Assembly: GCF_006345805.1 (NCBI RefSeq) | Contig: NC_043019.1 | Span: 14,073,360 to 14,137,359 of the forward strand | Direction of reading: 5' to 3' | Length of the DNA stretch: 64,000 nucleotides | Origin: Octopus sinensis | Taxonomy: Eukaryota | Shown here: in pieces, positions 5,783-43,408 of the stretch | Layout: each line of letters opens with the position of its first letter | Numbering within the stretch: position 1 is the first letter of the stretch | Notes under the pieces: generated by a model | Database searches by the model: none | What the model was told of the DNA's origin: nothing | What the model saw: only the letters and a program-made list of their open reading frames with translations | Position numbers and translations under genes: made by a program

Positions 5783-5835
<53 letters not shown>

Positions 5836-6326
5836 TATATACGACGGGCTTCTTTCAGTTTCCGTCTACCAAATCCACTCACAAGGCTTTGTTTGGTCGG
5901 CCCGAGGCTATAGGCGAAGACACTTGTCCAAGGTGCCACGCAGTGGAACTGAACCCGGAACCATGTGGTTGGTAAGCAAGCTACTCACCACACAACCACT
6001 CCTACGCCTGTATATATATATGAGCATTTATATAACAGTTTCAAATTTTTGCACAAGGCTAGCAAATTCTGGGGACGGGGCAAGTAGATTACATTGACCC
6101 TAGTGTTTAACTGGTTTGAATTTTATCGACTCTGAAAGGATGAAAGGCAAAGTCGGCATTGGCGGAATTCGAACTCAGAACGTAAAGACGGATGAAATGC
6201 GGCTAAGCATTTGTCCGGTGTGCTAACGATTTTACCTTCAGCTCTATCTTTAAGAGATGAGGAATTATGTACTTTATTTACATTATTTACATTCGACGGA
6301 TGTTTGTCCTCATCATGTTTGTTGTT

Positions 6327-6372: not shown

Positions 6373-7329
6373 TTGGGGAAATTTCGAACCTGGGTTCTCA
6401 TTCTTAAGGTATTTGGTAACACACCACACCCTATGAATATTCTAAACCAAATACCTTACGAACATTAGAAACTAAATTTAATTTGAACAACTTCCGCCAC
6501 TATCCATAACACTGCTTAACACAGTTTTTTTGTCCTTGGGTAGAGACTGTTGTTCCCTATTTGCTTACCCCTGGAAAGTATGAAAAATGGTTCATATTCC
6601 CTTCAAACTTTACTTTTGTTACATTTATTCAAACCCCAAAGAATCTCACGCAACAAATGATTATGACGCTCCTCCAATACTCCTGCTCATGATCAGAGAT
6701 GCACATATTGTCAGCCATTAAGGGACATGCTAAAGTGGTTTAATGTCAAACAAATCTGTGATATTGAGCAGAATATTTGTTAAAATGATATTTTTGCTTC
6801 AGTAATTCAGCGCTAAATCTGTCTGAAATGTAATGGAAAATACGCCAGTTTCAAAACATTGATGTCTACGTCACAAAAATAAAAATCTGGAGGGAATAGT
6901 AGACATTTCCTTCGATTTATAGACAGAAGCAAATAGGAAGTACCACTTATTGACCAAATACAAATAAATAAGTGGAATAAAATGAAAATTTGGTTACACA
7001 CACTAATTGATTTCTTCCGTTTAGATCATCATGGCGTATATAACAAAGGCCCTTTGAAATATTTATTGGAAGCTTGATTAAATAATTTAATGTTGGCTAA
7101 AATGTGACAAAATATAACGAAACACTCCTTCATAATACAATGTCCGCTCGTATTTTCTCTTTTATTTTTTAATGTCTCCTTCTAGTCTGTGCGAAATTGT
7201 CGATTTTTACTCTCAAGTACCACTTGTTTCTGATTCCAAACTCTTTTTATTTGTCGGATGGATGCTTAACTTAGTTTCTAGTTGGATATGTAACGAAAAT
7301 ATAAAGACACACTCCCTCATAATGCGTTC

Positions 7330-7755
7330 TAATGACTAACAGCCACTCGTTTTTTGAGGGGTTTTTTCTTTCCTCCATATTGCCTGTACGACATTGTGGA
7401 ATTTTGCACTCAAATACCGTTCGTTCTTGATTCCAGACACTTCCTATTGTTTCATGTACATAGATATTTTATACGAAAAATAAACAGAAGAAGCAATGAC
7501 TCAATGGTCAATTCACCGTACGCAACCGGAAAATTTTACATCCTTGTCTCAACAATATAAGAAGTCGAAATATTTGCCGACATGATATTAAAAGAAAAAC
7601 TGATGCCGTGACGAAGGTTGATGCCGGAAAACAAATATCAATATTTGTGTTTGATAAATGGAAACATCGCCTGAGTATCATTTAAATTATATTGCAGAAT
7701 ATTTCACTGAACAGCGTTCAACAATTTTGCTTAGCCAAAACAGAAGCGAAGCACA
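7330..7755 (+). promoter_or_regulatory. Probable ACOD1 promoter/5' UTR region
   Basis: Unique, repeat-free sequence directly upstream of the proposed ATG. It has two CCGGAAAA motifs (7526, 7624) and TTCACTGAA at 7703..7711. The TSS is not identifiable from sequence. Confidence 0.3.
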
Positions 7756-7779
7756 ATGAATTTCTTCTCATTAGCTAAG
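7756..7779 (+). CDS. ACOD1: ACOD1 putative exon 1 (MNFFSLAK)
   Basis: gcacaATG with A at -3, followed by a strong donor AAG|GTAAGC at 7780. Phase 0 matches exon 2. Located in unique, non-repeat sequence. No homology support. Confidence 0.65.
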
Positions 7780-10663
7780 GTAAGCGAGCATTTTTCGCTC
7801 AGACATTTCTTACAATGGAGCATAGTTTTCGCTTGTTTCTCTCCTACTTGCCGCCTTTTCTTTGTTTTATTTTATTTTTCCTCTAAATTAACCCAAATTT
7901 GTATTGGCGTCTTGCATAGGATATGGAGGCGCATGGTTTATTGATTAGGTTGTTGAACTCATAATCGTAATATGACTGGCATATTTTCGTTTCGAATTAT
8001 ACAACTGCCTCCCTGTGTGTTTGCCTATCTGTTCGTCTCTCTCTCTCTCTCTCTCACGCACACGCGTGCACACACAAATACACACATACAATGATCTTCC
8101 ATCTACGAAATTTATTCACAAAGCATTGGTCGGCGCTCAGTGCTATAATAGAAGACACTTGCCCAAATAGGACTGAACCTGAAATCACGTGATTATAAAG
8201 CGCGCTTCTTAACCACACAGCCATGTCTGCTTCACACACACACACACATGCACATACACAAGAGTGGCTGTATGGTAAGTAGCTTGCTTACCAACCACAT
8301 AGTTCTGGGTTCAGTCCCACTGCGTGGCACCTTGGGCAAGTGTCTTCTACTATAGCCTCGGGCCGACCAAAACCTTGTGAGTGGATTTGGTAGACGGAAA
8401 CTGAAAGAAGCCCGTCGTATATATGTATATCTATATATATGTATGTGTGTGCGATCGGAGGATCGCGGTTTCGATTCCCATACCAGGCGTTGTGTGTATT
8501 TATTGAGCGAAAACACCTAAAGTTCCACGAGGCTCCGGCAGAAGGTGGTGGCAACCCCTGTTGTACTCTTTCGCCCCAACTTTCTCCCACTCTTTCTTCC
8601 TGTTTCTTGTCTCCGACTTCCTACGCAACCGCTGAGCCTGGATGCGCATTCATCCATCCGTCGATGCTCTTGGTGTCGGGGATTGACCTGCTTTCTCTTC
8701 TGCGGGTCTTACGAATAGCAAAGGACCAAGTTTCGGACTTCTCCCACTACAGGACGAAGACCACTTCGCTCATGAAACAATCACCAACAGCAGTGATGGC
8801 CGTGAATTTTTGCTTGAGACTATACTGGTTTGATGATCCCACTCTGCCAATGTGGCTCGGCATGGATTGGCAGATGGATGCAACTTGTTATAGTGATACC
8901 TAGGAGTAGTTAGATTGATTACATTGATCCCAGTGCGCAGCTGGTATTTATTTTATCAACCTCGAAAGGATAAAAGGCAAAGTTGACCTCGGCGGAATTT
9001 GAACAGAGAACGTAAGGACGAACGAACGACCGTTAAGCATTTCCACCAGCGTGCTAATGATTCTGTCAGCTTGCATACAAGAAAATTTCGTATCAAAGAA
9101 ATAATGTCGGAACCAAACGAAGAAACAAAGATCCATCTCAGCTTAGCACTAGTGAGATTTGAGGCTTCGTCTTAGAGTAACAAACTTTCGAAAGAAATTT
9201 GAAAAATGTGACAGCTAATACGTGAAGAAATTAACAAAAGAAGCAGAGGGAGTATATATAAAGCTTCTCATCGTGTTGAAAACTGACACTACCAGAGAGA
9301 AAATAAAGTCCAAGAAGATCTTGGGGTCAAAAATATGAGAATACAAAAACAAGAGTACGAATACAGGAATATGAAAACATCTATGGGAAAAAACAGATAA
9401 AACCTAAACATCGACTCACTGCGACAACCTCTAGGCTTCAAGAAAATTCAAACCATTAAAAGAAAAGAAGGATCTTCACAAAATAGACAAAGATACCTTA
9501 TTCCCCAAAGAAACACATTTCGATTATACATGGATGTGAAAAGAAGTGAGAGAAAACACAACTCCTACCAAAGACACGATAGATCCCGCCAGAGGCTTGA
9601 TCAAAGACCCAAGAGAACTAAATACAATAACGATAGAATTAGGGGTCAATCTCCAAGCCATTAAGAATTTACTTACCCAAAGATACCCAACCGAAAATGT
9701 CAACACAAACATTTCCAACCTCCAATGGAAACCATTTTTTAAGACAGGAGATCTATCAATAGAAAAGGAACTGAGGCGCGACACCGTTCCTCAAAAGAAA
9801 ACAGACAAATCCAAATTAATAAATTTATCCAACAAAAAATGATCTTAACAAGAAATTAGATTCTTGGAAAATGGATTAAAATTTCAACCCACTCCCAAAC
9901 CCAACCAAGCTGAACTTGTAAATGACAGAAGAATTTTGTCGAAAACTACAATTAAGAGAATTCTTCCTAAATACTGGATATACGGATGATTCGCTAGTTA
10001 AAAACAAAATGGGATTCAAAGAACTCTTTAGTAGAAACAAGCTTTTGGAAGAATACATAATCTGCCTACGATGATCGGCACAATCCGATATTACAGAGAG
10101 GAAATGTAAATTTAATGTATCCAAAGACCAATTACAAACATTAAACAATTTACAAAGAGACTCATCAATAATTATCAAAGAAGATGACCGGAGCGATCGT
10201 AATTATGGACAAAAAACATTTACAGAGACATGGTTTTGGAATAATTTAATGACCAACGCTTCTGCAAAAAGATAAATAAAAACGAAGATAAACAAAGTAT
10301 ACAAATTCGTCTGAAAACATCGAAATAGCCAATTAAAGAATTAGATAAATTATTTGACTAGCTTCGAAGTAAAAACCAGTAACGTCAATGGACTTTCTAA
10401 AACCCATAAATCGAGAGAAATTCAAGACAGGAGCTGGAAAGCCAGAAGACTGCACCAAGCTCTACTGTCCAGGTTTTGGCATAGTTTCTACAGCTGGATG
10501 CCTTTTCTAATGCCAACCCAAATTAAAAACATGTGACACCATAAAGACAAAGGTACATTTAAAACAAGCCTTTACTAACACATACACTCACCTACGAACA
10601 AACATTGAACTGTAGTTATTTATCAATACAAAATATATAAAAGAATGTCTTGATCCAATACAG

Positions 10664-10701
<38 letters not shown>

Positions 10702-11567
10702 ACTCTCTCTCTCTCTCTTATACACACACACACAAAGTATTTGTTTTTATATTTTTACATGTGGTGTTTATGAGACTTTTGCACAGATTTACCCAGTAAT
10801 CATCATCCTCATCATCCTCATCATCATTTAACGTCTGTTTTTCTTGCTGGCATGGGTCGGACGGTTCGACAAGGAGCTGGCTAGCCAGATGACTGCGTCA
10901 GGCTTCACTGTCTGTTTTGCCAAGGTTTATACAGCCCTTCCTAATGCCAAGCACTTTAGAAAAGTGACCAGGGTGCTTTTTATGCGGCACAAGCACCAAC
11001 ACCAGCATCTGGTTTTGAATTCTCCCTTGAAAATTCTTAGCTTTTATGCTGTTTCGGTAACCTTGCAGAAACAAGGCACCAAAATTACTGGACCTAAATA
11101 AAAGATGTCGATTGGCTAACAAGATGCTTAGGTTTTCCATAATTTCTCCAACTCAAACCAGGACAACCTTCAAATCAAAGACGTCGTATATTTAGATGTA
11201 TGTATATAAAGAACTTTTCATAACTTTATTTTCCTTCAAGAATGAGACGGTTGGGTGAAGCTGCTGTTGTTGTTGTTAAGCAACAAGACGGGTAAGGGTG
11301 ATTAGGTGATGGTCTAGGGCTTAAGGGCGGGAGACCCCAGACCTTGGTAAAAAAAAACTTTGGTCGTTTTGTTTTAGTTGAGGGCTCTTCGTGGACGCCC
11401 GACACCACTGGGAGGTGGCCCTCGAAGTTGCTGGAAATGGAGATCTCCAGGTCCAAATTCTTGGACGGCGGGTGAAGCTGTTTGGATGCTGACGGTTTGG
11501 CATGGCTGACTGGACATTGAACCTAGTTTGGTGATTGTACATTTTGGTATTGGAAGTAAACACCCAC

Positions 11568-11604
<37 letters not shown>

Positions 11605-14600
11605 ACACACACGCACACGCACGCACACGCACACACACACACTCACACTCACACACACATACACACATACATACCCATACACATACAGAGGGAGAGAGAG
11701 TTATTAATTGATTATGGTTGATATAAACACTTACCCTCTTTTCAGACACACAGAGAAATATACTTGCTCACATAATCAGTGAAAGGGAGGGAAAGAGAGA
11801 GGGAGAGAGAGAGAAAGAGAGAGAAATAGCATAAGACATATAAGGATTTATACACAAGTTCTCCATTCAAAATGTAGTATCATCACCATGAACATCATTA
11901 TCATCATCATTGTCATCGCCATCATCCTCATCATCATCATCCTCATTATCACCATCATCCGCATCATCATCATTATCGTCTAGGTCGTCATTGTTGTTGG
12001 CGTCATCATTGTCGTCGTCGCCATCATCATCATCACCATCATCCGCATCATTATCATCATCACAATCATCATCATCATCATCTAGGTCGTCGTTGTTGTT
12101 GTCGTCGTCATCATCATCGTCATCCACATCGTCATCATCAACATTGTCATTATCATCATCATTATCCTCATCGTCGTCCTCCTCCTTTCCCTCCTCCCCC
12201 AAACACGATTACATCGGCAACAAATTCGATGTCAGGTTTGTAGCTAGAAATAGAATATCGACTGGATCGTCATATTTGGGGCCTCAAAGAAAACGGTGAT
12301 GGTGGCATAAGAGAAAAATCGAATGAAAATAGATTTTTCCCACTGAATAATAACATAGAAATTATATGCCAATTCTGCTTTGATTCTTTCTTACCTGTAG
12401 GTGCCGAGTAACAAGTGGAATGTACGAATTTTATTCCGGACAAAACAGCAATCAAAGAATCTTTCTTTGCAGTCGAAACTAGATTTGGAAAATTATTCTG
12501 AATGTTCTCATCGTAAGTAAAACTCAATATACCAGAATATTTATCATTATACCTGTATCGTTATCATTCAGCCCCAGGTGACAAGGTATGTTCCAGAAGT
12601 TTTGAGACATTCTCAGGAAAGACTTATTAATTTCAAAGAAATACAAAAAACTCTATTTCTCCATGAAAGTCCTTTAATGCGCCATGATATTCCTTCGTCT
12701 TCTCAATATCTTCAAAATGGCTTCCCCTGTGGTCCTCTCTGAAGTTTTTTTATTCTCTCTCTGTTTATTTCCTTGTGTTCTTTTCTGGTGAAGAGCATAG
12801 GCTCGAAATGTAAAAGACTTTCTCACCTTCCCGAGTGTCAAATTAATACACCTGCTTGTTGTTCATACACCTGAATTCGTTTTTTGTTTGTCTGTAACGT
12901 GTGTACCGTTGGTGATTTTTTTTCCTCTGTCTTCCCTTTTCCTATGTTTCCGACAAAGAGCTCCGCTCGAAACGTTAAACCCTCCTTCTTTCCTGAGCGT
13001 CCAATAATACTATATTTGTTCCACGTCCTTGCGTTGTTGTGTTTTTTTTGTGTTTTCTTGTTTGGATTAACTTTATATATATATATATAGTTTAAAATAG
13101 TAAGGGTGAAAAATTGAATATTAATTTGATGGGCCAGGGGCTATAGTAGGGGACATCTGCCCATGGTGCCATGCAGTGAGATTGAACCTAAAACCATGTA
13201 GCTGGAAAAACAAACTTTCTAACCAACCAGCTATGCCTCATTTTCATAGCATTCCGTTGTTCTCTTTTAACTTCATTGATATTTCTTCTTGCAGAATCTT
13301 CTCCACCAGTTTTACGACCACAAAGTGTTACCTCACTGTTTGCAGAACTCATCAGCAATGCAAAACTTAGTAATTTATCAGAAGTAGTACAAGCCAGAAG
13401 CAGAAGAATGCTCTTGGACACTTTGGGTGTCGGTATTCTTGGCTTCAACAGCGAAACAACAAAAAGTGTGATGTCGTGGGCTGAAAATCTTGGATACTTT
13501 GAAGAACACAAAAGTGGCCGGCAAAAATCAAAGAACGTGGTGATATGGGGGAGTTCTAACAAAAGGGCTCCTATTGGTCTTGCAACATACCTCAATGGAA
13601 TTAGCATCCATTCAATGGACTTTGACGACACCTGGCACCCAGCCACTCATCCAAGTGGCCCCGTTTTACCTGCTGTTTTGTCACTGTCGGATTACATGAC
13701 TGGTTCTTATTGCCCCACTTCAGAGGAGCTTTTGGTTGCCTACAATGTTGGAATTCAGACGCAAGGGCTCCTTCTTCAAAGTTCAGCAAAGTCTAAGAAT
13801 ATTCCTGAAAGGTGAGTAGTAATTTTCTGCTTCTTTCTTTCTTTCTTTTCTTTCTTTCCTTCTTTCCTTTCTTTCTTTCCTTTCTTTCTTTCTTTCTTTC
13901 TTTCCTTCCCTCCTTTCTTTCCTTCCTTTCTTTCTTTCTGTTTTTGTGTTTACATCCCTGTAACTTAGTAGTTCAGCAAAACAGACTGATAGAATAAGTA
14001 CTAGGCTTACAAAGAATAAGTCCTGGGGGTCAATGTGTCTGATTAAAACCCTTCGAGGTGGCCACGGTCAAATGACTGAAACAAGTAAAAGAATAAAAGA
14101 CTAAATTAGGTGCAGCCACATTGGTGTCTAATCATTAGTGTTAATAACTTAATTACAATTTTTGTCAAGAAAGCAAGGGAGAGAACCCTGAGCAAAATTC
14201 TCGCTGGCTGTGGATATTCTCAGACGTAGTTGTCAATGTGAAATATTTTCTTTCATTTCAGGTTCCATCCACCAGCTGTGGTCGGGGTGATGGGAGCAGC
14301 TGCTGCCACAGCACGTTTGCTCCAGCTTGGACCACTGAAAACTAAACATGCACTCGCCATTGCAGCCTCCTTTGCTGGTGCACCAATGGCAAATGCTGGC
14401 ACTCAATGCAAACCATTGCATGCAGGAAAATCTGCCCGTTTTGGTCTGGAAGCTGCCTTAATGGCAGACCAAGGTAAGGGACAGCCAAAAATTGGCTGTA
14501 TTGATTTTTAATTGTCCCTGATTGATTTTTGGAGATTTTCTTGGTGGTGTAGCGAAGAGAGATCATTATTTGTAATATTGTCAATATTTCTTTTGATTCA

Positions 14601-15087
14601 TTAATTAAATTATAGTTTTAATTATTTTGACAAAAGTTACCATTATATGTGTGGATGTGTAATTAAGACATTTGCTTCTGAACAACGTCGCCTTATATTC
14701 AGGTTCCATTGCGTGGCACCTTGGGCAGGTGTCTTCCACCTGTAGTCTTGGGCTGACCAAAGCCTTGAGTTAATTTGGAAGACAGAAACTGGAAGAAACA
14801 CCATAGGTGTGGCTGTGTGGCAAGAAGATTGCTTCCTCACCACATGGTTCTAGGTTCAGTCCCCCTGCGAGACACCAGTCCGTCGCAGGTGAGCTGCAAG
14901 ATGCAGGAGGAAAGAGTGAGAGAAAGTTGTGGTGAAAGAGTCAGCAGAAGTTCGCTATTACCTTCTGCCAGGGCCGTGTGGAGCTTAGGTGTTTCACTCA
15001 TAAACACACACATTGCCTGGTCTGCGATTTGAACCCGTGATCCCTAGACCATGAGTCCACTGCTCTAACCACTAGGCCATGTGCCTC

Positions 15088-15125
<38 letters not shown>

Positions 15126-17534
15126 CATAGAGAGAGAGAGCGATATCTACGTGTGTCTTTGTGTTTGTGCTTGTCCCTCGATTACCACTTGACAGCCAGT
15201 GTTGGTATGTTTACATCCCTGTAACTTAGACGTTCAGACAAAGTATCCAACAGAGTAAGTACCAGGTTTTAAAAACGGAATAAGTGCCGGGGTTAATTCA
15301 TTTGACTAAAATACTTCAAGGCATTGCTCCAACATGGCCACAGCCTAATGACTGAAACAAGTAAAAGCTAAAAAATAAAAAATAAAAGTTTTCTGTTTAC
15401 AGGAATGGAAGGAAACGAAGACATTCTTGACACCGCCTCTGGTTTCAGCGTATTCTTCGAAGACTATTCACCGGATTTGTTGGTAGAAGCGGCCCTAAAT
15501 AACCAACATTATATTCTTCATAATCAAGACGTTGCCCTTAAACGGTTCCCTGCTCATTTGGCAATGCATTGGGCTATTGATGCTACGATGGAAGCTCGAC
15601 AACAAATGACTGAAGAATTCAACACTGAAATTCCATATAATGAAATAAAAGACGTCCAAATTGTAGTGCCTTCATCGAAATATATCGACCGGCCATTTCC
15701 AAAGTCTCAGCACGAAGCAAGGCATTCATTTCAGGTGAGTTAATTAGTTACAACCTGGCAGAATCTATTTCTTTATTGCCCACAAGGGGTTAAACATAGA
15801 GGGAACAAACAAGGACAGACAAACGGATTAAGTCGATTACATCGACCCCAGTGTGTAACTGGTACTTAATTTATCGACCTTGAAAGGATGAAAGGCAAAG
15901 TCGACCACGGCGGAATTTGAACTCAGAACATAACGGCAGACGAAATACGGCTATGCATTTTGCCCGGCGTGCTAACGTTTCTGCCAGCTTGCCGCCTTTA
16001 GCATTCAAATTGCTCTGTCAAATGCAACGCTTATTCATTCACAACGTTAAACACGCATTATCTTCTAGCCTCAATATTACAATGATATGATTGTATTTTT
16101 GTAGGATGACATTGTAGGGTAGGTGTGAGAGGCCAGATATGGTTAGTTTGAACATAAAACAGATAGAATATTTTTGGCTAGGAAGGGCCAGTTTAAATGC
16201 TGAAGGGTTAACCATTTAGCATTCAGATTACTCTGTCAAATGTAAAGCTTTGAATTAATCATGCATTATCTCAAAGCTTCAAGATTATGATTACAAGGGG
16301 AGAAAATGCATCAAGTGATTGGGCCGTCGCCAGCCTCCCCTGGCACCTGTGCCGGTGGCACGTAAAAAACACCCCCTACATACACGAGTGGTTGGCGTTA
16401 GGAAAGGCATCCAGCTATAGAAACACTGCCAGATCAGACTGGAGCCTGGTGCAGCCCCTGGCTTCCCAGACCACGGTCGAACCGTCCAACCCATGCTAGC
16501 ATGGAAAACGGACATTAAATGATGATGATGATGAGGAGGATGATGTGGTCTAAGTAATTATATCAACCCCAGTATTCAACTGGTACTTATTTTATTGATC
16601 CTGAAAGGATGCAAAGCAATGTTGACTTCAGCAGAATTTGAACTCAGAACGTAAAGACAGACGGAATGCCACTAAGCATTTTACCCAGCAGGCTAATAAT
16701 TGCGTCAGCTTGCCACTTTCTGGAAACAATTATTATATTACTAGCAGTATTGCCTGGCGTTGCTCGGGTTTGTTTCGACCTTTTAGAATTAGAATTTTTA
16801 AAAAGCAAAAATTCTGCATTAAGTAGCTTGTTATTCTCTTTAAGTGAACATTTTTCTGGTTGAAATACACCGAAAAATGGCGACACAGCAGTAAAAAAAT
16901 CGTAAAAAATAGGGATTTTCATAGAAAAAAAGAATCTTTTTGATGTAAATAATTTTTGGTGTTAACATGGTCTGATTTGAATTTTTTCTTCTACGGAATG
17001 AAAAGCAAGCCTTCTTCTATCATACTCTCAATTTTGGTCAACTTGCACCGCAGGGTCTCGGAGGAGATAGTGTTAGTTGAAGGCTACCAAACCTGTCATA
17101 CACAGACAACTTCAGCTTTGTATAGAGAGAGATTATTAGTAAGATTTTGTTCTTTTTTATTGTAGTTCAATGTTGCTTCAATGTTACTTGACGGAATCAT
17201 GACACCAAAGAGTTTCACCTCAGAATGTCGGTCCAGGACGAATCTTAACACTCTTCTACAAAAGTGCCATTTACTCAGGAAGGAAGACAACGTGGCAAGC
17301 TTTAACAGAATGTATGTGGAAGTAATGGTCACCTTAAAAAATAACAAGGTTTATAGGGGCCGTTGCGATACACCTTATGGTCATTGGCGTAAACCTTTGA
17401 CCGATATCGACGTCCAGTGCAAATTCCTCAACAACACAAAATCTTTACCAAACGGTATTCCTGAAGCCATCATTGAATCGGTAATGGGTTTGTCAGGCTC
17501 ACCCGAGGAACTCTTAACTTTGTTGAAAAACTGA
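7756..17534 (+). CDS. ACOD1: Cis-aconitate decarboxylase (ACOD1/IRG1, MmgE/PrpD family), 6 coding exons, 521 aa predicted
   Basis: The spliced translation contains HSMDFDDTWHPATHPSG, RFHPPAVVG, AGAPMANAGTQCKPLH, QDVALKRFPAHL, RPFPKSQHEARHSFQ and YGHWRKPL. These are near-identical to the human ACOD1 motifs as I recall them. Exons of 24+112+517+212+332+369 = 1566 nt join in frame with intron phases 0,1,2,1,0. All introns are GT-AG. Stop TGA at 17532..17534. Confidence 0.93.
9180..10420 (+). mobile_element. Decayed Penelope-like ORF fragment (pre-RT N-terminal region) in ACOD1 intron 1
   Basis: With stops and frameshifts repaired it reads KLINLSNKK..QEIRFLENGLKFQPTPKPNQAEL..D..FCRKLQLREFF, IIIKEDD..GAIVIMDKK and GLSKTHK. 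These resemble the PLE motifs INLS/GLNF.PTP, KADKG and GLPKIHK. Confidence 0.7.
11875..12185. repeat. (CAT/CGT)n trinucleotide low-complexity tract
   Basis: Visible directly. It is the source of the poly-D and poly-S ORFs. Confidence 0.95.
12401..12512 (+). CDS. ACOD1: ACOD1 putative exon 2 (VPSNKWNVRILFRTKQQSKNLSLQSKLDLENYSECSH)
   Basis: Acceptor ttctttcttacctgtag| and donor C|GTAAGT at 12513. Only one of the three frames is open across the exon, and it ends in phase 1, as exon 3 requires. Confidence 0.78.
12780..12817 (+). ncRNA. Degenerate hammerhead motif in ACOD1 intron 2 (sense)
   Basis: CUUUU CUGGUGA A GAGC AUAG GCUC GAAA UGU A AAAGA. Position 6 is G instead of A. Confidence 0.55.
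12946..12980 (+). ncRNA. Degenerate hammerhead motif in ACOD1 intron 2 (sense)
   Basis: GUUU CCGACAA A GAGC UCC GCUC GAAA CGU U AAAC. Stems are intact; the core carries U4C and G8A. Confidence 0.55.
13295..13811 (+). CDS. ACOD1: ACOD1 exon 3 (N-terminal helical domain, DFDDTWHPATH motif)
   Basis: Acceptor tttcttcttgcag| and donor AG|GTGAGT at 13812. Strong ACOD1 similarity (RMLLDTLGVG, NGISIHSMDFDDTWHPATHPSG). Confidence 0.96.
14262..14473 (+). CDS. ACOD1: ACOD1 exon 4 (FHPPAVVG...KPLH)
   Basis: Acceptor tttcatttcag| completes the split Arg codon. Donor G|GTAAGG at 14474. Confidence 0.96.
15403..15734 (+). CDS. ACOD1: ACOD1 exon 5 (GNEDILD...KRFPAHL...EARHSFQ)
   Basis: Acceptor ttctgtttacag| and donor CAG|GTGAGT at 15735. 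Confidence 0.96.
15995..16300. mobile_element. piggyBac-like MITE (15995..16207) plus a truncated second copy sharing TTAA 16208..16211
   Basis: TIR CC(C)TTTAGCATT(C/T)A at both ends. The right end reads AAATGCTGAAGGG|TTAA. Confidence 0.6.
16741..17132 (-). mobile_element. Non-autonomous Helitron (family H1) in ACOD1 intron 5
   Basis: On the minus strand it runs A|TC...GC-rich hairpin...CTAG|T with no TSD. Homologous to 34052..34442. Confidence 0.8.
17166..17534 (+). CDS. ACOD1: ACOD1 terminal exon 6 (FNVASMLLDG...YGHWRKPL...LLKN*)
   Basis: Acceptor tttttattgtag|, in frame with the ORF at 17181..17534. Confidence 0.95.
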   Translation, partial: FNVASMLLDGIMTPKSFTSECRSRTNLNTLLQKCHLLRKEDNVASFNRMYVEVMVTLKNNKVYRGRCDTPYGHWRKPLTDIDVQCKFLNNTKSLPNGIPEAIIESVMGLSGSPEELLTLLKN

Positions 17535-21991: not shown

Positions 21992-23264
21992 CAATATATG
22001 TATGTATATATATGTACACACACACACACACACACACATGCGCGATGGCTTGCACAGAGTTCCCATCAACCAAATTCCCTTACAAAGCATTGGTCGGCCC
22101 ACAGCTTTTAGTAGGAGACACATGCCTAAGGTGCTGCAAAGTGGAACCGAACCCAGCACCCCACTTGTGCAAATCAAACATCTTAACCACAAAACCACAC
22201 CTGTAACTATATATATATCTTCTGCAAAAATGTATTACTTTAGGCATTTTCTTATTAAAAACATCAAAAGGAGCCGACTTAAGTGTTCAGTCGTTGTACG
22301 TCTTAGACACAGGAAGACATTATCAGAAGCATGTCCAGTAATCTAAAGACGCTGGGAGGTTATTGATGAGATGAATAGGAATGGAGATGATAGAGAACTC
22401 TATTCCGTCTTTGTTTGGTTCAATGCAAGTGGTGCATGGATTAAACGACGACGTCGATGAACGCAGTAAAATTGATTCAGAGACGCCATCTGCAGGAAAA
22501 AAACAACAGTTAAGTTAGTGTTGATATCTCTTACTCTTTACTCTTTTACTCTTTTACTCTTTTACTTGTTTCAGTCATTTGACTGCAGCCATGCTGGAGC
22601 ACCGCCTTTTAGTCGTGCAACTCGACCCCCGGGACTTATTCTTTGTTAAGCCTAGTACTTATTCTATCGGTCTCTTTTGCCGAACCGCTAAGTAACAGGG
22701 ACATAAACTCACCAGCATCGGTTGTCAAGCAATGCTAGGGGGACACACAGACATACACACACGCATATATATATATATATACATATATACGACGGGCTTC
22801 TTTCAGTTTCCATCTCCCAAATCCACTCACAAGGCTTTGGTCGGCCCGAGGCTATAGTAGAAGACACTTGCCCAAGGTGCCACGCAGTGGGACTGAACCC
22901 GGAACCATGTGGTTGGTAAGCAAGCTACTTACCACACAGCCACTCCTGCGCCTATATTTGATGTGTTTTAATGCTGGGAATATGAAAAGGCTAATTGGGG
23001 GAAATTGCGTTGTGAAATTAAGCTAACGAATCAATAAATAAAACAACGTTAGAAAATAACAGGTAGACGTGGATTATGGTCAAGTAGGTTGATTCTAAAT
23101 CGAAATGGTTTTAGGTTCAGTTCCACAGCATGGTACCTTGGGAAAGTGTCTTCTATTATAGCCCTGAGCTGACCATGTGGTTGGGAAGCAACCGTCATAC
23201 CACATAGACACACCTGTCATGCATACGGGAATACACCAGTTGACAAGTGATAAATAGACACACA

Positions 23265-23309: not shown

Positions 23310-24845
23310 CACTAGGCACAATATAAAACTAAAAAATGGAAAGCTTTAATCGTCACTAATTGTGACTGAGTGTGCCAAAGCACCTACATTGCAAGAAATA
23401 AGAGTTAAAAAGCCTTAATGCCACACAGAGCATGCAATGTATATACACTGACAGGGGAGATAACTGCCCATGAACAACTAGAGATCAATGGACCAAACTA
23501 ATTTTGCCCGTCAGTCATAGACCTGTCATCAGTGACTACTCACTTGTTTGGCTAAATTGGACTGTCAGTATATATATTTACACACAAACATACACACACA
23601 CACACACACATATATATATACATATATATATACATATACAGTTGTGAAACCTGTGCTGGTGGCACGTAAAAAGCACCATTCGAACGTGGCCGATGCCAGC
23701 ACCGCCTAGACTGGCTTCCATGCTGGTGGCACGTAAAAAACACCAATCCGATCATGGCCATTGCCAGCCTCGCCTGGCACCTGTGCCAGTGGCACGTAAA
23801 AAGCACCCACTACACTCTCGGAGTGGTTGGCGTTAGGAAGGGCATCCAACTGTAGAAACATTGCCAGATCAGACTGGAGCCTGGTGCAGCCTTCTGGCTT
23901 CGTAGATCCCCGGTCGAACCGTCCAACCCATGCTGGCATGGAGAGCGGATGTTAAACGATGATGATGATGATGATGACATATATACAACAGTCTTCTTTC
24001 AGTTTCCATCTACCAAATCCACTCACAAGTCTTTGGTCAGCCCGAGGCTATAGTAGAAGACACTTTCCCAAGATGTCATGCAGCGGGAATGAACCCAGAA
24101 CCATGTGGTTGGTAAGCAAGCTACTTACCACACAACACTCCTGCACCTATGTATTGATTTTTTCCAGTATTTTTCTTCCCATAAACACATTCAAGGGAAT
24201 GACGATGCATCCAAGGGTGATCCATTGCTGGGATTTAAGCAAGATATTCAGACTGACCATATTTTAAACTCTGATTTTTTTAAAAAGATAATTTGCAAAA
24301 GTGTGGAAATTTTAGGATTTATGGTGTGGAGGAATTAAAAGAAAAACTTTTTTCATAATTGTAAGAATTCCCATGTGTAGAAACACATTCACAAAAAGTT
24401 TTCTGAAAATTCCCCAAAATAAAAAAAAATTATGGTCAATCATAAGGGTTGCTTCAACTAAAATTCTACCAAAGTCCTTTCCTGTGGCATATAGACTCAA
24501 AGGTCCAGTTTCTCAGATTTTCTGGTGTATATACACCCCCTGGATGGGGGTGTATATACTCTGAAATTAAGTGTTTGGCACAAGAACACAACACATTGAC
24601 CAGACCAAGAATCAAAACTACAATCTTAAAACCATGAGTCGAACACCCTAACCACTAAGCTATGTACCTCAATATCCCGTAGAGTTAAAGCATAAATGTT
24701 TTACTCATCTGTGCCATAAACTATTTCCCAGATTCTCTGACAAATATATTCACCTCTGGATGGGACCCCAATCCATTGCTGGATTATTCAGTTTTGCCAG
24801 TTGAGTGGAGTTGAATAACTCGAAATGAAGTGTTTGGCACAAGAA

Positions 24846-25414
24846 CAGTGCTGGATTAACCCATTAAGCAAAATAAGCAGGTGTTTAGGGCATCAAGGGA
24901 AGGAGGTGGGGCACCACAGAAATGATAAATGGTTGACGGCACAAAAGAAATCACTTTAAACTTGCTAAAAGGCTATTCGGGATGTCTTTATGTCTATTGA
25001 GTATAGGTACAGATGCGTTACCTGAGATTAATGAGAGAGAGAAGGGGGGGAAGAAAGAAGGAAAGAAAGAAAGAAAGGAAGATAGAATGAATGAAAAATA
25101 GAATGAAAGAAAGGAAGGAAGAAAGAAAGAATGAATGAAAGAAAGAAAGAAAGAAAGAATGAAAGAAAGGAAGGAAGAAAGAATGAAAGAAGAAAGAATG
25201 AATGAAAGGAAGGAAGAAAGAATGAAAGAAAGGAAGGAAGAAAGAATGAAAGAAAGAAAGAAAGAAAGGAAGAAAGAATGAATGGATGAATGAAAGAAAG
25301 AATGAAAGAAAGAAAGGAAGGAAGGAAGAAAGAATGAAAGAAAGGAAGGAAGGAAGAAAGAAAGAAAAAGAAAGAAAGAAAGAAAGAAAGAAGGAAGAGG
25401 AAGGAAGAAAGGAA

Positions 25415-25451
<37 letters not shown>

Positions 25452-25815
25452 GAAGAAAGGAAGGAAGGAAGGAAGGAAGGAAGGAAGAAAGGAAGAAAGA
25501 AAGAAAGAAAGAAAGAAGGAAAGAAGGAAAGAAGGAAAGAAAGAAAGAAAGAGAGATAGAAAGAAAGAGAGATAGAAAGAAAGAAAGAAAGAAAGAAAGA
25601 GAGAAAGTGGGAGGAAACTTTTCAAATCTAAATAAAATGGAAGTAGACAAAAATAAACATAATTTTCCCTCTTTTACTGTTTTGTTTCTTTTTGAAAAAT
25701 AAAAATTTATTTTATGGTTTGTTTTTGTTTATATTTTAAATTACATAATCCTTTATGGTGGGGTACCAAAATCTTTTAAGTGCTTAGGGCCTCGATGGGT
25801 CTTAATCCGACCCTG
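24846..25815. mobile_element. hAT-type non-autonomous element with 8 bp TSD, carrying a (GAAA/GGAA)n tract at about 25035..25605
   Basis: TIRs are CAGTGCTGGATTAA and the reverse complement CAGGGTCGGATTAA. Perfect TSD CACAAGAA at 24838..24845 and 25816..25823. Confidence 0.88.
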
Positions 25816-35252: not shown

Positions 35253-36429
35253 ATATATATTATATATATATATATGTATGTATGTATGTATGTATTATGT
35301 ATATAGTACATATATAAACATACACATGATTATGTCCATATATATATATATATATACATACACGCTCACACATATATGCACATACACCTACTCTCACAAT
35401 CACACACATATATCTGTGTGTGTGAGTGTGTGTGTGTATGTATTAGAATCTGTGTGGTTGTATTTGTGTTAATGTGTATTCACCCATGCATGACTGATAT
35501 TTTGAACTTGAATCACTGATGCACTTCGCTGCACTCCGCTGCACTTCATTACGTTTGTCCAATTCAATAACATGAAACAAAGGTAACAAGAAAAAAAAGA
35601 ACAAAAACAAAAAGCAAAAGAAATAAAATAATGTAAACAAAAAACTAAAAGAAAAACGGAAACAAAAAGATCAAAATATAAAAAAATAAAAAAAAGGCCC
35701 CTGCTAATGATGTATTAGGATTTGATGTTTTTCCTCAAACTGTGCAATTTCGTTAAGAAAGAAACTGATACGAAAGTCTGTTATTGCAGAAAACCACTTT
35801 TGTTGTTGACTGTCGATTCCGAAGACCATCAATCATATTTGCAGATAGGAGAACGTTACGAAGAGGAATTAAAAGGGAAAGAAAAGGAAGAGAGATGAGA
35901 GAGAGAGAGAGAAGAAGAGAAAAGAAAAAAAACAAAGATAAATCTTTGACAGATAATGATAATGTTTGGTAGAATCAATGATTTCCATTGAAAAGAAACC
36001 TCCGTACTGATACAATACGCAAGCATTTCTGATATCTTTGTTGGAATGTCAGCATGTGTAATGTTACGTTAGAGTAGCGTAGAGTTATTTCTGTAGACTT
36101 GAGCTATATTCCACAGCATGCAGCCTACATGCTGTGATATACTGTAAGTTTAATTGGGGGAGCAGAGGGCATGGTTCATTTCTGTGTATTTTTTACTATT
36201 TCTACAATATGCAGCTTCTCTGCAATGGTATAATCTGTGATTAATTGAGGGCCAGAGGGCACAGTTCATTTCTGCAGAGTTAAAAAGTATTTTATTGAAA
36301 ACAGTGAATTGATGACGGTGAACATTCCACAGGGGAAATATTAACTTACTTGGAAGCAAGATAAGGGTTGGTGACGGTAAAGGCATCTGGCAATGGAATA
36401 CCAACAAATTCTGTCCAATCCATACAAAC

Positions 36430-36447
36430 ATAGACAAAGCAGACATT

Positions 36448-36479
<32 letters not shown>

Positions 36480-37514
36480 GGTAGTGGTGATGGTAGTAGT
36501 GGTAGTTTTGGTGGTGGTGGTGATAGTTTTAGTGGTGGTGGTTTTGGTGGTGGTGGTGATAGTTTTAGTGGTGGTGGTTTTGGTGGTGGTGGTGGTGGTG
36601 GTTTTGGTGGTGGTGGTGTTGATGATGGTCATAGTGGTGATGGTGACAATGATAGTAGTAATGGTGGTGGTAGTGGTTTTGGTGGTGGTGATGGTGACAA
36701 TGATGATGTTGATGGTGGTGGTGGTAGTGGTGGTGATGATGATGATAGTGGTGATGATGATGCTGATGGTGATGGTGGTGGTGGTGGCGACAATGATGGT
36801 AGTGGTGAGGATGGGGGAGTGATGATGGTGGTTGTGGTGGTGAGGATGATGATGATGGTGATGATGATAATGACGGCGGTGGTGGGTGGTGATAGAGGTA
36901 GTGGTGGCAGTAGTTGTAGCAGTGGTGGTGGTGGTGGTGGCAGTGGCATGTGACGACAACAACGACAACAACGATTGCGGTGGTAGCTGTGATGGTACCA
37001 GTGGTGGTGGCGATGATGATGATGATGATAATGATGGAGATGTGTGCATCTACGCTTGCGTATGTGCATGCATGTGAGCATACAGCAAAGCAAAAGTGCC
37101 AATCGCACACAGTCGGTTGTAAAATCTCACATCTTAGTAACTTTGCAGGAATTCTACCATTTTGGAACGTTGCTTGTAGAAGGAACTGTGATGCTTGTTG
37201 CAGAGGAGAAGAATTGAATGGTTCCCTAAGAGTCCAAATGGATTCCAATTGCTGCCATGGCAACGGCAACAAATGGATTGTATTGACTATGGAAATTGCA
37301 AACCGTTCTGTTTATCAAAAGTTTGCTATCAGCGAGATGTGTAAGAATGGAAATTGCTGAGGGGTGGCGGTGGGGTGGGATGATTGGTGGTGGGGGACAA
37401 AAAAAAACCCCAAAAAGATAGCATACAAACAAACAAACAAAAATGACGAATATTTGAATATTTTCCTACAACAACAGCTATTTCCACGAATCTGGTTTTT
37501 CTCTTGTCACCACC

Positions 37515-37566
<52 letters not shown>

Positions 37567-38060
37567 GCACCGCCATCATCATCATCATCATCATCATCAC
37601 CACCACCACCGCCACCACCACCACCATCGTCATCATTCTCATCATCATCATCAAAACCACCACGATCATAGTTGTTGTCATCACCACCACCACCACCACC
37701 ACCACCACCACCATCATCATCCTCATTGTCATTGCCATCGTCATCATCGTAATCCTCACCATCCTCAACATCATCATCGTCATCATCATTCATCATTGTT
37801 GTCATCAACATCATCTTCCTCAATCATTGCCGTTGTTGTCGTCATAATCATTGTCATCGTCCTCCTCCTCCTCCTCCTCCTCTTCCTCCTCCTCCCCCTC
37901 TTCCTCCTCATCATCATCAGTATCATCAACATTGTTGTCATCCTCCCGTTCCCCTCCTCCCCCCTTCTCTTCCTTCTCCCCTCCTTCTCTTCCTCCTCAT
38001 TCCCTCCTCCTCCTCCTCCTCATCATCATCATCATCATCTTCATTGTCATCGTCGTCGTC
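36430..38060. repeat. Two trinucleotide low-complexity tracts: (GGT/GAT)n 36430..37030 and (CAC/CAT/CAG/CCT)n 37505..38060
   Basis: Visible directly. All six frames give homopolymeric translations. Confidence 0.95.
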
Positions 38061-38472
38061 ATCGTTTCAATGTCCACTTTCCCATGCTTGCATGATGCCA
38101 AACAGGATTCATTGAATCAGATCTCTTCGCTCCAGCCCTTTTTTCTCGCCAGCCTCCATTCATTTCCAAGCAAGGTAATAATTTCCCCATGGCCAGACAT
38201 GCTTTCACGGATGACTGGCCATGGGGACACATTGTTGCTTGCATCTCTGCCACACGAGATTATGACTACTGTCCTGCAATGACAAAACATGCCACACACA
38301 CACACACACACACATGCATGAATATTTACATATATATGTGTGTATATATGTGTATATATATATATATATATATAACGGGAAGCTTTATGAAAATAAACAA
38401 AAGACGAAGGCAGGTGGAAAACAAACGAACAATTGTATTAGTATGGCGCTCAGGAAATATAAATAAAACAAG

Positions 38473-42760: not shown

Positions 42761-43408
42761 CAAGGAGCTTCTCTGCCCTAGGTGTACGGAAAACACTCGG
42801 CGAGAAATGGAAGAAAATTTGAAGAAAGAAGGAAAAAAAAAATAATAATGATAGAGTTGGGACCTATATACACTGGAAGCTATACCAACACTATGGAATA
42901 ACAACAGAAAAGAGATGGTGTAGGCACATGCCAGAAAAGGTCACAGAAAAAGGGAAAGCAACCAGATTCTGGAATGTGTCAATATACACAGATAGAGAAA
43001 TTAAGGCTAATAGGCCAGATATAGTTGTCAGAGATCGGCAAGAAAAAAAAAACTTTCTAATCGATGTATCAATACTAACAGATGACAGGTTGATAAATAT
43101 GGAGACCTGAGGATTGAGATTGCTATGATGTGGCAGCTACGAGAGTCAAACATAAAGGTTATCCCTATTGTCATCGGAACATTGGGTTCAATACCACCCA
43201 ATCTGAAAAGAAAAAAACATCTGAAACTTTAGAAATATCTTACAATCTAGGTGTATTGCAAAAGTTGGCGTTACTTGGAACTGCACGCAGTTTGCATAAA
43301 GCTCTGTCTGTCTGAGGTCCTTGTTGTGACTTGACAAACAGTATAAATCCCCGCTGGACACAATACCTTCAATCAACAACCTCATGATATTGTACACTGT
43401 GCGACGTC
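42761..43408 (+). mobile_element. R4/Dong-like non-LTR retrotransposon 3' fragment (RLE domain), copy 1
   Basis: DRVGTYIHWKLYQHYG..WCRHMPEKV..NRPDIVVRDRQEKKNFLIDVSI..LQKLALLGTARSLHKALS, flanked by (TAA)n on both sides. Confidence 0.82.

What the first reader, a model, noticed from the sequence alone, without database searches (positions are those of the whole stretch)
7756..17534. Complete ACOD1/IRG1 gene implies an itaconate immunometabolic pathway in a probable cephalopod
Seen: an intact six-exon ORF with no stops or frameshifts, despite introns full of transposons. Known (human numbering from memory): the active-site residues D93, T97, H103, H159, K207, K272 and Y318 all have identical counterparts here (DFDDTWHPATH, RFHP, CKPLH, LKRFP, SKYID). 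ACOD1 converts cis-aconitate to itaconate, which inhibits bacterial isocitrate lyase and host SDH. Inference: this animal can make itaconate as an antibacterial or immunoregulatory metabolite. IRG1-like genes have been reported in other molluscs, so the novelty is the probable cephalopod context and gene structure rather than the family.
Basis: partly seen in the sequence, partly recalled or inferred. Interest (0 to 1): 0.72.

Follow-up and report, generated by a model that had tools for sequence, protein, structure and literature searches.

The report
Octopus cis-aconitate decarboxylase (ACOD1/IRG1) gene
The region holds an intact six-exon octopus gene for the enzyme that makes the defence metabolite itaconate, but the gene is already annotated in public databases and belongs to a mollusc branch of the family already described, so it is real and ordinary.

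Summary
Exons 7756-7779, 12401-12512, 13295-13811, 14262-14473, 15403-15734 and 17166-17534 (+ strand, all GT..AG) give a 521-aa protein. It is 100% identical to RefSeq XP_029650023.1, "cis-aconitate decarboxylase-like [Octopus sinensis]". The overlapping 27.5 kb of the window match O. sinensis chromosome record CM016881.1 with no mismatch.

The protein is an animal ACOD1/IRG1 orthologue:
- It scores E~1e-120 against human and mouse CAD crystal-structure sequences, against 1e-28 for IDS epimerase. It falls far below the PrpD cut-offs.
- It sits in a mollusc clade with 100% bootstrap inside a 100% animal clade.
- All eight mutagenesis-validated active-site residues are conserved.
- dN/dS for the catalytic domain against O. 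bimaculoides is 0.14.

The phase-2 intron in the Arg of RFHP is shared with limpet, oyster, amphioxus, fish and mammal genes. Two further introns are found only in octopods among the genes compared. Exons 1-2 encode a basic, unstructured leader of about 50 aa, like those of other mollusc "paleo-IRG1" proteins, and probably a mitochondrial presequence.

Enzyme activity and an immune role are inferred, not shown. Novelty is low: the gene is already annotated in three Octopus species, and a CAD transcript was listed in the O. maya white body in 2019.

The parts
7756..7779 (+). Exon 1 (coding part): ATG plus 7 codons (MNFFSLAK), followed by a phase-0 intron. It has A at -3 and an in-frame stop 21 nt upstream. 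The 5' UTR and transcription start are not determined.
   Evidence: The 8 residues are identical in O. bimaculoides, and Argonauta has a 7-codon exon at the same place.
7780..12400 (+). Intron 1 (4,621 nt). It holds SINE copies (about 8097-8451), other interspersed repeats (8917-9075, 10426-10518, 10800-10996), CA/CT microsatellites and a 9-nt-period array (11858-12196).
12401..12512 (+). Exon 2: the rest of the N-terminal leader (residues 9-45 and the first base of codon 46), followed by a phase-1 intron.
   Evidence: A phase-1 intron lies 31-34 residues before the RSxRM motif in the octopods, Lottia, Saccostrea, amphioxus and stickleback IRG1L.
12513..13294 (+). Intron 2 (782 nt). About 650 nt (12534-13185) have no counterpart in the 130-nt O. 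bimaculoides intron and consist largely of repeats, so this is a lineage-specific insertion.
13295..13811 (+). Exon 3: start of the MmgE/PrpD N-terminal domain. Active-site codons are D154 (13618-13620), T158 (13630-13632) and H164 (13648-13650). It ends inside the Arg218 codon (phase 2).
13812..14261 (+). Intron 3 (450 nt), phase 2, in the Arg codon of RFHP. This position is shared by all seven other animal loci examined. Argonauta keeps the exon and intron there, but its expected donor dinucleotide reads TT.
14262..14473 (+). Exon 4: active-site codons H220 (14266-14268) and K268 (14410-14412).
14474..15402 (+). Intron 4 (929 nt), phase 1 (ADQ|G). Among the genes compared it occurs only in octopods. 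78% of its bases are repeated elsewhere in the window.
15403..15734 (+). Exon 5: the small (lid) domain, with K335 (15540-15542), H340 (15555-15557), Y382 (15681-15683) and R395 (15720-15722).
15735..17165 (+). Intron 5 (1,431 nt), phase 0 (HSFQ|FN). Among the genes compared it occurs only in octopods. 78% of its bases are repeated elsewhere in the window.
17166..17534 (+). Exon 6 (coding part): the C-terminal part of the MmgE/PrpD fold, with TGA at 17532-17534. The first polyA-like hexamer (ATTAAA) is at 17677.

Best explanation
This is the single-copy Octopus sinensis orthologue of animal ACOD1/IRG1, in the mollusc 'paleo-IRG1' branch. It is a nuclear, spliced gene under purifying selection that encodes cis-aconitate decarboxylase.

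Shown:
- An intact six-exon gene.
- The MmgE/PrpD two-domain fold.
- All eight residues whose mutation to alanine abolishes or strongly lowers human CAD activity.
- Placement inside the mollusc clade of animal IRG1.
- Ancient introns shared with chordates.

Inferred:
- The enzyme decarboxylates cis-aconitate, released by mitochondrial aconitase, to itaconate plus CO2.
- The basic, unstructured leader of about 50 aa encoded by exons 1-2 is a mitochondrial presequence that takes the enzyme to the matrix, as shown experimentally for zebrafish IRG1L.
- The gene is expressed in haemocytes or the white body and induced by infection, as in oyster, mussel and amphioxus. Itaconate would then inhibit bacterial isocitrate lyase and host succinate dehydrogenase.
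For: - Identity and organism: the protein is 521/521 identical to XP_029650023.1. The window matches CM016881.1 with 0 mismatches over 27,534 bases.
- Family: Pfam MmgE_PrpD_N (3.8e-53) and MmgE_PrpD_C (1.3e-29). phmmer against PDB sequences gives human and mouse CAD at about 400-404 bits (E about 1e-118 to 1e-120), IDS epimerase at 103 bits and B. subtilis 'IRG1' at 78 bits, with no PrpD at E<=1e-3. The NCBIfam PrpD equivalogs score 44 and 31 bits against cut-offs of 575 and 458.
- Library of 1.84 billion representatives: the animal clusters score 427 bits or more, and the next full-length (metagenomic) protein scores 209 bits at 33% identity.
- NJ tree (66 sequences, 447 columns, 100 bootstraps, rooted on E. 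coli PrpD): animals 100, molluscs 100, vertebrates 100, with the window protein inside the molluscs.
- Active site: D93, T97, H103, H159, K207, K272, H277 and Y318, plus R331, are all identical. Their role rests on mutagenesis reported in PMC6789909.
- Structure: the AF2 model has mean pLDDT 85. The best Foldseek hits are 6R6U, 6R6T and 7BR9 (target-normalised TM 0.92-0.94), against 0.85-0.87 for IDS epimerase and 0.68-0.80 for PrpD.
- Selection: against O. bimaculoides, dN/dS is 0.20 overall and 0.14 for the domain.
- Shared introns rule out contamination or recent transfer.
- Leader: residues 1-35 carry net charge +7, and the first acidic residue is at position 36. pLDDT is below 50 and there is no secondary structure for residues 1-51. 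Most mollusc homologues have comparable K/R/S/T-rich extensions of 26-96 aa. TargetP calls a presequence in 34.6% of pIRG1/IRG1L proteins, and zebrafish IRG1L is in the matrix and makes itaconate in vitro.
- Expression and immune context in relatives: a CAD transcript is listed among 'hematopoietic fingerprint' proteins of the O. maya white body. Oyster pIRG1 is highest in haemocytes and induced by poly(I:C), amphioxus pIRG1 is induced by LPS and poly(I:C), and mussel haemocyte IRG1 is induced by poly(I:C).
Against: - No enzyme assay, metabolite measurement or expression data exist for O. sinensis.
- D93, H103, K207 and K272 are strictly conserved in IDS epimerase and 2-methylcitrate dehydratase too, and H159 has a near-equivalent His in both. 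These five residues therefore do not prove decarboxylase chemistry (PMC6789909).
- The leader evolves almost neutrally between the two Octopus species (dN/dS 0.96, on only 17 substitutions). No dedicated targeting predictor could be run.
- Most pIRG1/IRG1L sequences were not called as presequence-bearing by TargetP in the preprint.
- The 1-kb upstream region shows no NF-kB or ISRE site. It has only single GAS-like and AP-1 matches, which is chance level.
- In oysters LPS induced the gene only minimally, so a specifically antibacterial role is not established even in the best-studied mollusc.
Confidence: 0.85

Rival explanations
1. The enzyme is a genuine cis-aconitate decarboxylase, but its main role in octopus is not immune defence. 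It could instead act in stress or hypoxia metabolism, or in regulating the TCA cycle through SDH inhibition in the matrix.
For: Full-text hits report itaconic acid in mollusc metabolomics of transport stress, heat stress and air exposure (PMC8623598, PMC6993748, PMC10756084; titles and abstracts only). Oyster pIRG1 is detectable in several tissues at rest and responds little to LPS. A matrix-targeted enzyme would inhibit the host's own SDH directly, as the preprint argues. No immune promoter motifs appear above chance.
Against: In every animal tested so far (oyster, mussel, amphioxus, zebrafish, mammals) the gene is induced by immune stimuli or enriched in immune cells. The one octopus record is from the white body, which is considered the haematopoietic organ of cephalopods.
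Confidence: 0.15
2. The protein has the same fold but different chemistry. It would be an MmgE/PrpD-family enzyme acting on another substrate, for example a dehydratase, an epimerase or another decarboxylase.
For: The family is functionally diverse. Half of the eight active-site residues are shared family-wide. No pIRG1 from a mollusc has been assayed in vitro; the preprint assayed zebrafish IRG1L.
Against: All eight residues are identical to human CAD, including the four that differ even in the fungal CAD. The protein is 46% identical to human CAD over 443 aligned positions. It nests with 100% support among animal IRG1 proteins, of which both vertebrate paralogues make itaconate. The PrpD equivalog scores are more than tenfold below their cut-offs.
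Confidence: 0.04
3. The gene is silent or decaying, or is an artefact of gene prediction, rather than an expressed gene.
For: The public models are computational predictions. The leader exons evolve nearly neutrally. In Argonauta hians the donor of the conserved intron reads TT, and the annotated model skips 42 residues.
Against: The ORF is intact with canonical splice sites in both O. sinensis and O. bimaculoides, with identical exon structure. Domain dN/dS is 0.14 with dS 0.17. A CAD transcript was assembled from O. maya.
Confidence: 0.03
4. The gene is bacterial contamination or a recent horizontal transfer into the octopus genome.
For: MmgE/PrpD proteins are mainly prokaryotic. The preprint proposes an ancient prokaryotic origin for animal IRG1.
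Against: The gene has five spliceosomal introns, and two of them sit at positions shared with chordates. It lies in a 32.9-Mb chromosome record surrounded by octopus SINEs. The nearest non-animal proteins are only 28-36% identical.
Confidence: 0.01

Closest known systems
Human and mouse ACOD1/IRG1/CAD (PDB 6R6U, 6R6T, 7BR9)
   Same: The same two-domain MmgE/PrpD fold (target-normalised TM 0.92-0.94). 46% identity over 443 aligned positions. All eight validated active-site residues and R331 are identical. The phase-2 intron in the Arg of RFHP is shared with mammalian ACOD1.
   Different: The octopus protein has a leader of about 50 aa on two extra exons, which the mammalian enzyme lacks. It has two octopod-specific introns and lacks the two phase-0 introns of vertebrates. 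The mammalian enzyme is reported to lie outside the matrix.
Mollusc, amphioxus and lamprey 'paleo-IRG1' (Szeligowski et al., bioRxiv 10.1101/2022.06.17.496652), e.g. Crassostrea virginica pIRG1
   Same: The octopus protein falls in the mollusc clade (100% bootstrap) at 49-57% identity to gastropod and bivalve proteins. It has the N-terminal extension typical of this group, and a phase-1 intron separates leader from domain.
   Different: The preprint's main text does not mention cephalopods or introns. The octopod genes carry two additional introns. No expression or induction data exist for octopus apart from one transcript listing.
Zebrafish IRG1L (vertebrate paralogue with a presequence)
   Same: Leader plus catalytic domain. 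The stickleback IRG1L gene shares both ancient introns with octopus. The zebrafish enzyme is in the matrix and makes itaconate in vitro.
   Different: It is a vertebrate-specific paralogue arising from a duplication in the gnathostome stem, not an orthologue of one particular mollusc gene.
Aspergillus terreus CadA (fungal cis-aconitate decarboxylase)
   Same: The same reaction and the same superfamily.
   Different: It is only about 23-25% identical to the mammalian enzymes, four of the eight active-site residues differ, and it sits on a separate branch among prokaryotic sequences. It was not compared directly here.
PrpD/MmgE 2-methylcitrate dehydratase and IDS epimerase
   Same: The same fold. 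D93, H103, K207 and K272 are strictly shared, and H159 has a near-equivalent His.
   Different: 18-21% identity. PrpD models score far below their cut-offs, and E. coli PrpD serves as a distant outgroup in the tree.

Membership tests
MmgE/PrpD superfamily | Both Pfam domains (PF03972 N-terminal, PF19305 C-terminal) above the gathering score | tested here: met
   180.7 and 103.6 bits against a cut-off of 32.1 for each.
Animal ACOD1/IRG1 (cis-aconitate decarboxylase) | Closest characterised relatives are animal CADs, by sequence and by fold | tested here: met
   Human and mouse CAD at E about 1e-118 to 1e-120 against 1e-28 for the next family. Foldseek top six hits are all human or mouse CAD.
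Animal ACOD1/IRG1 (cis-aconitate decarboxylase) | Monophyly with animal IRG1 sequences to the exclusion of prokaryotic MmgE/PrpD proteins and PrpD | tested here: met
   The animal clade has 100/100 bootstraps and the window protein lies inside the molluscs (100/100). This was NJ only; no ML tree was run.
Animal ACOD1/IRG1 (cis-aconitate decarboxylase) | The eight active-site residues validated by mutagenesis in human CAD (D93, T97, H103, H159, K207, K272, H277, Y318) | tested here: met
   All are identical: D154, T158, H164, H220, K268, K335, H340, Y382. Residue list from PMC6789909.
Animal ACOD1/IRG1 (cis-aconitate decarboxylase) | Shared gene structure (ancient intron positions) | tested here: met
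   The phase-2 intron in the Arg of RFHP is present at the same codon position in Octopus (2 species), Lottia, Saccostrea, amphioxus, stickleback IRG1L and porcupine ACOD1. In Argonauta the expected donor reads TT and the annotated model uses an upstream donor.
Animal ACOD1/IRG1 (cis-aconitate decarboxylase) | Catalysis: cis-aconitate to itaconate plus CO2 | not testable with these tools
   Needs recombinant enzyme and HPLC or LC-MS.
Animal ACOD1/IRG1 (cis-aconitate decarboxylase) | Induction by infection or PAMPs in immune cells | tested here: inconclusive
   Only a motif scan of the 1 kb upstream was possible, and it found nothing above chance. A CAD transcript exists in the O. maya white body.
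Paleo-IRG1 (pIRG1) subgroup with mitochondrial presequence | N-terminal extension relative to mammalian IRG1 | tested here: met
   52 residues precede the position of human Met1. They are encoded by exons 1-2 and the first codons of exon 3, have pLDDT below 50 and lie outside the fold.
Paleo-IRG1 (pIRG1) subgroup with mitochondrial presequence | The extension is a functional matrix-targeting signal | tested here: inconclusive
   Composition fits: net +7 over residues 1-35 and no acidic residue before position 36. TargetP and MitoFates were not available, and the leader's dN/dS is about 1.
PrpD 2-methylcitrate dehydratase | Score at or above the NCBIfam equivalog cut-off (TIGR02330, NF006943) | tested here: not met
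   30.6 bits against 458, and 43.9 bits against 575.
IDS epimerase | Closest similarity to Agrobacterium IDS epimerase (2HP0/2HP3) | tested here: not met
   103 bits and 21% identity, against about 400-404 bits and 42-46% identity for CAD.

The most novel reading that the evidence does not exclude
Two intron positions are shared between octopus and chordate genes: the phase-2 intron in the Arg of RFHP, and the phase-1 intron at the leader/domain boundary. This shows that IRG1 was already an intron-bearing nuclear gene, with its leader on a separate exon, in the last common ancestor of protostomes and deuterostomes. The patchy animal distribution would then reflect repeated loss rather than separate transfers. 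Within cephalopods the gene may survive only in octopods, which gained two introns, and it may already be decaying in Argonauta, where the donor is lost. Neither point is in the literature I could search.
Probability: 0.6. Interest if true: 0.3.

Novelty: already known. Interest (0 to 1): 0.14.

Why it matters
The window adds no new kind of system. It confirms that octopuses carry the conserved animal gene for itaconate synthesis. This supports the view that itaconate biochemistry predates the split between protostomes and deuterostomes, and it gives cephalopod immunologists a ready target in haemocytes and the white body.

The small new contributions are comparative:
- Intron positions are conserved across bilaterians. 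The published evolutionary analysis did not examine them.
- Two introns occur only in octopods among the genes compared.
- The leader sits on its own exons.

These points bear on whether animal IRG1 arose once, and on whether the ancestral enzyme worked in the mitochondrial matrix.

Tried and rejected
- Pfam scan of eight TE-like or long ORFs in intron 1 and elsewhere in the window (9540-9839, 9849-9986, 10075-10272, 8394-8900, 38556-39131, 40749-41183, 43188-43802, 62335-62838): no hits. No transposon could therefore be classified by protein domain.
- Promoter scan of 6756-7755 for NF-kB, ISRE/IRF, GAS, AP-1, C/EBP and TATA motifs. It found one palindromic GAS-like site (7703, conserved in O. 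bimaculoides), one AP-1 site (7497, not conserved) and no NF-kB or ISRE site, which is chance level. The upstream 800 nt are about 87% identical to O. bimaculoides, similar to the introns, so footprinting at this divergence is uninformative.
- Rfam at gathering thresholds and ARAGORN on the whole window: nothing.
- tblastn of the protein against the window: no second copy or pseudogene.
- Literature: 'itaconate' with 'octopus' returned 8 papers, none relevant. 'octopus' with 'IRG1' returned 1 irrelevant paper. 'cephalopod' with 'aconitate decarboxylase' returned 1 paper, the O. maya table entry.
- The antisense ORF 13188-13646 (152 aa) overlapping exon 3 is the usual shadow of a coding exon and was not pursued.
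- Synteny with the VOC, YrdC, 2OG-oxygenase and GAT neighbours described for pIRG1 could not be tested. No other gene is called from the window's start to position 27,534 (10 kb of flank either side of the gene), and no convincing coding ORF appears in the rest of the window.
Full report
**Observation**

Reading the + strand between 7.7 and 17.6 kb shows four long stop-free stretches with MmgE/PrpD-like sequence, flanked by canonical splice signals. Two short upstream exons were located by comparison with the O. bimaculoides protein.

The six exons are 7756-7779, 12401-12512, 13295-13811, 14262-14473, 15403-15734 and 17166-17534. They join into a 1,566-nt ORF of 521 codons plus TGA, with GT..AG at every intron and phases 0, 1, 2, 1, 0. 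An exact spliced mapper I wrote takes only the protein and the DNA, and it recovers the same model. tblastn finds no second copy in the window.

**Source**

The product is identical over all 521 residues to XP_029650023.1, 'cis-aconitate decarboxylase-like [Octopus sinensis]'. It is 93% identical to the O. bimaculoides protein XP_014779084.1. An O. vulgaris model (CAI9739276.1) is in the same 90% cluster.

The gene lies on O. sinensis record CM016881.1 (GCA_006345805.1). The 27,534 bases of overlap with the window show no mismatch, and window base 1 is record base 14,073,360. 'Probable cephalopod' is therefore right, and the gene is already annotated.

**Family assignment**

- Pfam finds both MmgE/PrpD domains.
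- Against PDB sequences, human and mouse CAD score about 400-404 bits (E about 1e-118 to 1e-120). IDS epimerase scores 103 bits, B. subtilis 'IRG1' scores 78 bits, and PrpD is not found at E<=1e-3.
- The two NCBIfam PrpD equivalog models give 44 and 31 bits against cut-offs of 575 and 458.
- In a library of 1.84 billion representatives, the only strong full-length matches are the Octopus cluster and an amphioxus cluster (427 bits). The next full-length proteins are metagenomic, at 209 bits or less and 28-36% identity.
- An NJ tree was built from 66 sequences (12 mollusc, 12 vertebrate, amphioxus, 40 non-animal representatives, and E. coli PrpD as root) over 447 columns with 100 bootstraps. It gives 100% support for animals, molluscs and vertebrates, with the window protein inside the molluscs.
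- An AlphaFold2 model (mean pLDDT 85) matches 6R6U, 6R6T and 7BR9 best, with target-normalised TM 0.92-0.94. IDS epimerase gives 0.85-0.87 and PrpD 0.68-0.80.

**Active site**

Chen et al. 2019 (PMC6789909) identified eight pocket residues in human CAD: D93, T97, H103, H159, K207, K272, H277 and Y318. Changing any of them to alanine abolished or strongly reduced activity, and the natural variant R331H also abolished or markedly reduced it.

From the HMMER alignment, these map to identical residues in octopus: D154, T158, H164, H220, K268, K335, H340, Y382 and R395.

One caveat comes from the same paper. D93, H103, K207 and K272 are strictly conserved in IDS epimerase and 2-methylcitrate dehydratase as well, and H159 has a near-equivalent His in both. 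The argument for decarboxylase chemistry therefore rests on the whole set together with orthology.

**Gene structure compared**

I fetched the genomic loci of seven relatives and mapped their introns exactly.

- The phase-2 intron in the Arg codon of RFHP sits at the same position in O. sinensis, O. bimaculoides, Lottia, Saccostrea, amphioxus, stickleback IRG1L and porcupine ACOD1. It lies in an unambiguous alignment block.
- A phase-1 intron lies 31-34 residues before the RSxRM motif, at the boundary between leader and catalytic domain. It is present in the octopods, Lottia, Saccostrea, amphioxus and IRG1L.
- The introns after ADQ|G (phase 1) and HSFQ|FN (phase 0) occur only in Octopus and Argonauta.
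- The two vertebrate genes share two phase-0 introns of their own, and amphioxus has further private ones.

It also argues that the animal gene was already intron-bearing in the bilaterian ancestor. The published evolutionary study has no occurrence of the word 'intron'.

**Selection**

Against O. bimaculoides (Nei-Gojobori method), dS is 0.163 and dN is 0.033, giving dN/dS of 0.20. The value is 0.14 for codons 53-521 and 0.96 for codons 1-52, the latter resting on only 17 substitutions. The catalytic domain is under clear purifying selection, and the leader is only loosely constrained.

**Leader**

Exons 1-2 and the first codons of exon 3 encode 52 residues ahead of the position of human Met1.

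- Residues 1-35 carry seven K/R and no D/E, and the first acidic residue is D36.
- AlphaFold gives pLDDT below 50 and no secondary structure for residues 1-51.
- Most of the mollusc homologues examined carry K/R/S/T-rich extensions of 26-96 aa.
- The preprint reports that such extensions are frequent in pIRG1 and IRG1L, that TargetP.6% of them presequences, and that zebrafish IRG1L is a matrix protein that makes itaconate in vitro.

I infer a mitochondrial presequence, with a sub-claim confidence of about 0.6. No targeting predictor was available.

**Introns and surroundings**

Self-comparison of the gene against the window shows that 27%, 57%, 37%, 78% and 78% of the bases of introns 1-5 have other copies in the window. 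No exon base does.

The commonest element is a SINE-like unit of about 190 nt with a B-box-like GGTTCAGTCCC, present in at least 18 copies in 64 kb. Intron 2 carries about 650 nt that are absent from O. bimaculoides.

No other gene is called from the window's start to position 27,534, which covers 10 kb of flank either side of the gene. The remainder of the window consists of repeats, microsatellite arrays and a LINE-like fragment.

**Function**

What is shown is gene identity, integrity and constraint. What is inferred is the reaction, the compartment and the immune role.

Support from relatives:
- Oyster pIRG1 is highest in haemocytes and induced by poly(I:C).
- Amphioxus pIRG1 is induced by LPS and poly(I:C).
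- Mussel haemocyte IRG1 is induced by poly(I:C).
- A CAD transcript heads the 'hematopoietic fingerprint' table of the O. maya white-body transcriptome.

The upstream kilobase shows no immune-type motif above chance, so the sequence itself says nothing about inducibility.

**Verdict**

This is a real, intact gene, correctly identified and ordinary. It is already annotated in three Octopus species and belongs to a described clade. The only new points are comparative: the shared and octopod-specific introns, the leader on its own exons, and the lost donor in Argonauta. Interest is low.

Noticed in passing
window 8260-8450; also 5815-6001, 22756-22948, 23977-24143, 44530-44722, 47429-47633, 49780-49968, 50555-50725, 59332-59513, 61837-62027 and others: A SINE-like interspersed repeat of about 190 nt, with a tRNA B-box-like GGTTCAGTCCC and a microsatellite tail. 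It occurs in at least 18 copies on both strands of the 64-kb window at 74-94% identity, including inside introns 1, 2 and 4 of the gene. ARAGORN and Rfam do not recognise it.
   Followed up: partly
window 12534-13185 (intron 2): About 650 nt present in O. sinensis have no counterpart in the orthologous 130-nt intron of O. bimaculoides. Much of this stretch has other copies in the window, so it is a repeat insertion (or a deletion in O. bimaculoides) that arose after the species split.
   Followed up: partly
L002 (Argonauta hians BAAFZT010000097.1) 2550-2551: The donor of the universally conserved phase-2 intron reads TT instead of GT (GAAAG|TTTAGT against GAAAG|GTGAGT in Octopus). The annotated protein uses an upstream donor and lacks 42 residues, although the genomic exon is otherwise intact. 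This could be an assembly error, a non-canonical splice site or incipient gene decay.
   Followed up: partly
hit list (not in the window): Among cephalopods only Octopus (3 species) and Argonauta appear among the best 120 homologues. No squid, cuttlefish or Nautilus protein appears, although an orthologue would be expected to rank with the other molluscs. This may reflect missing annotations or real loss.
   Followed up: no
P0122 (O. vulgaris CAI9739276.1) C-terminus; P0121 (O. bimaculoides isoform X2): The O. vulgaris model replaces the last 14 residues with a repetitive 57-aa tail (VNILCGKLMTVNIPCGKLM...), which is probably an annotation artefact. O. bimaculoides isoform X2 starts at Met51 and lacks the leader. 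That codon is Val in O. sinensis, so the same short form cannot be made there.
   Followed up: no
window 38556-40300 and 16287-16545, 10801-10888: Another repeat family occurs as several tandem-like units of about 550 nt at 38.5-40.3 kb, with recurring translations such as '...HLCRWH...WLALG...'. Related copies lie in introns 1 and 5 of the gene. The ORF tested at 38556-39131 gave no Pfam hit.
   Followed up: partly
window 40537-41183 (- strand): An ORF fragment contains '...ERRLCWYGHVTRM...', which from memory resembles the C-terminal tail of LINE-type reverse-transcriptase ORFs. It gave no Pfam hit and lies in the GC-richer 36-42 kb stretch.
   Followed up: partly
window 25051-25607, 53345-53625, 53851-54545, 55178-55435, 55768-56277, 57868-59145, 60593-60967; 36150-38100; 11858-12196: There are long microsatellite and minisatellite arrays: (AAGA)n of 140 copies, (TCTA)n, (ATCT)n, 18-nt and 48/72-nt TG/TA-rich units, and a 184-nt dimer. 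Trinucleotide-periodic low-complexity stretches produce long spurious ORFs, and these account for the strong GC-skew excursions at 50-54 kb and 58-60 kb.
   Followed up: no
L009 14356-15348 (- strand; O. bimaculoides intron 1): A 113-aa gene with no Pfam hit is called on the opposite strand inside intron 1 of the O. bimaculoides orthologue. No equivalent is called in O. sinensis.
   Followed up: no
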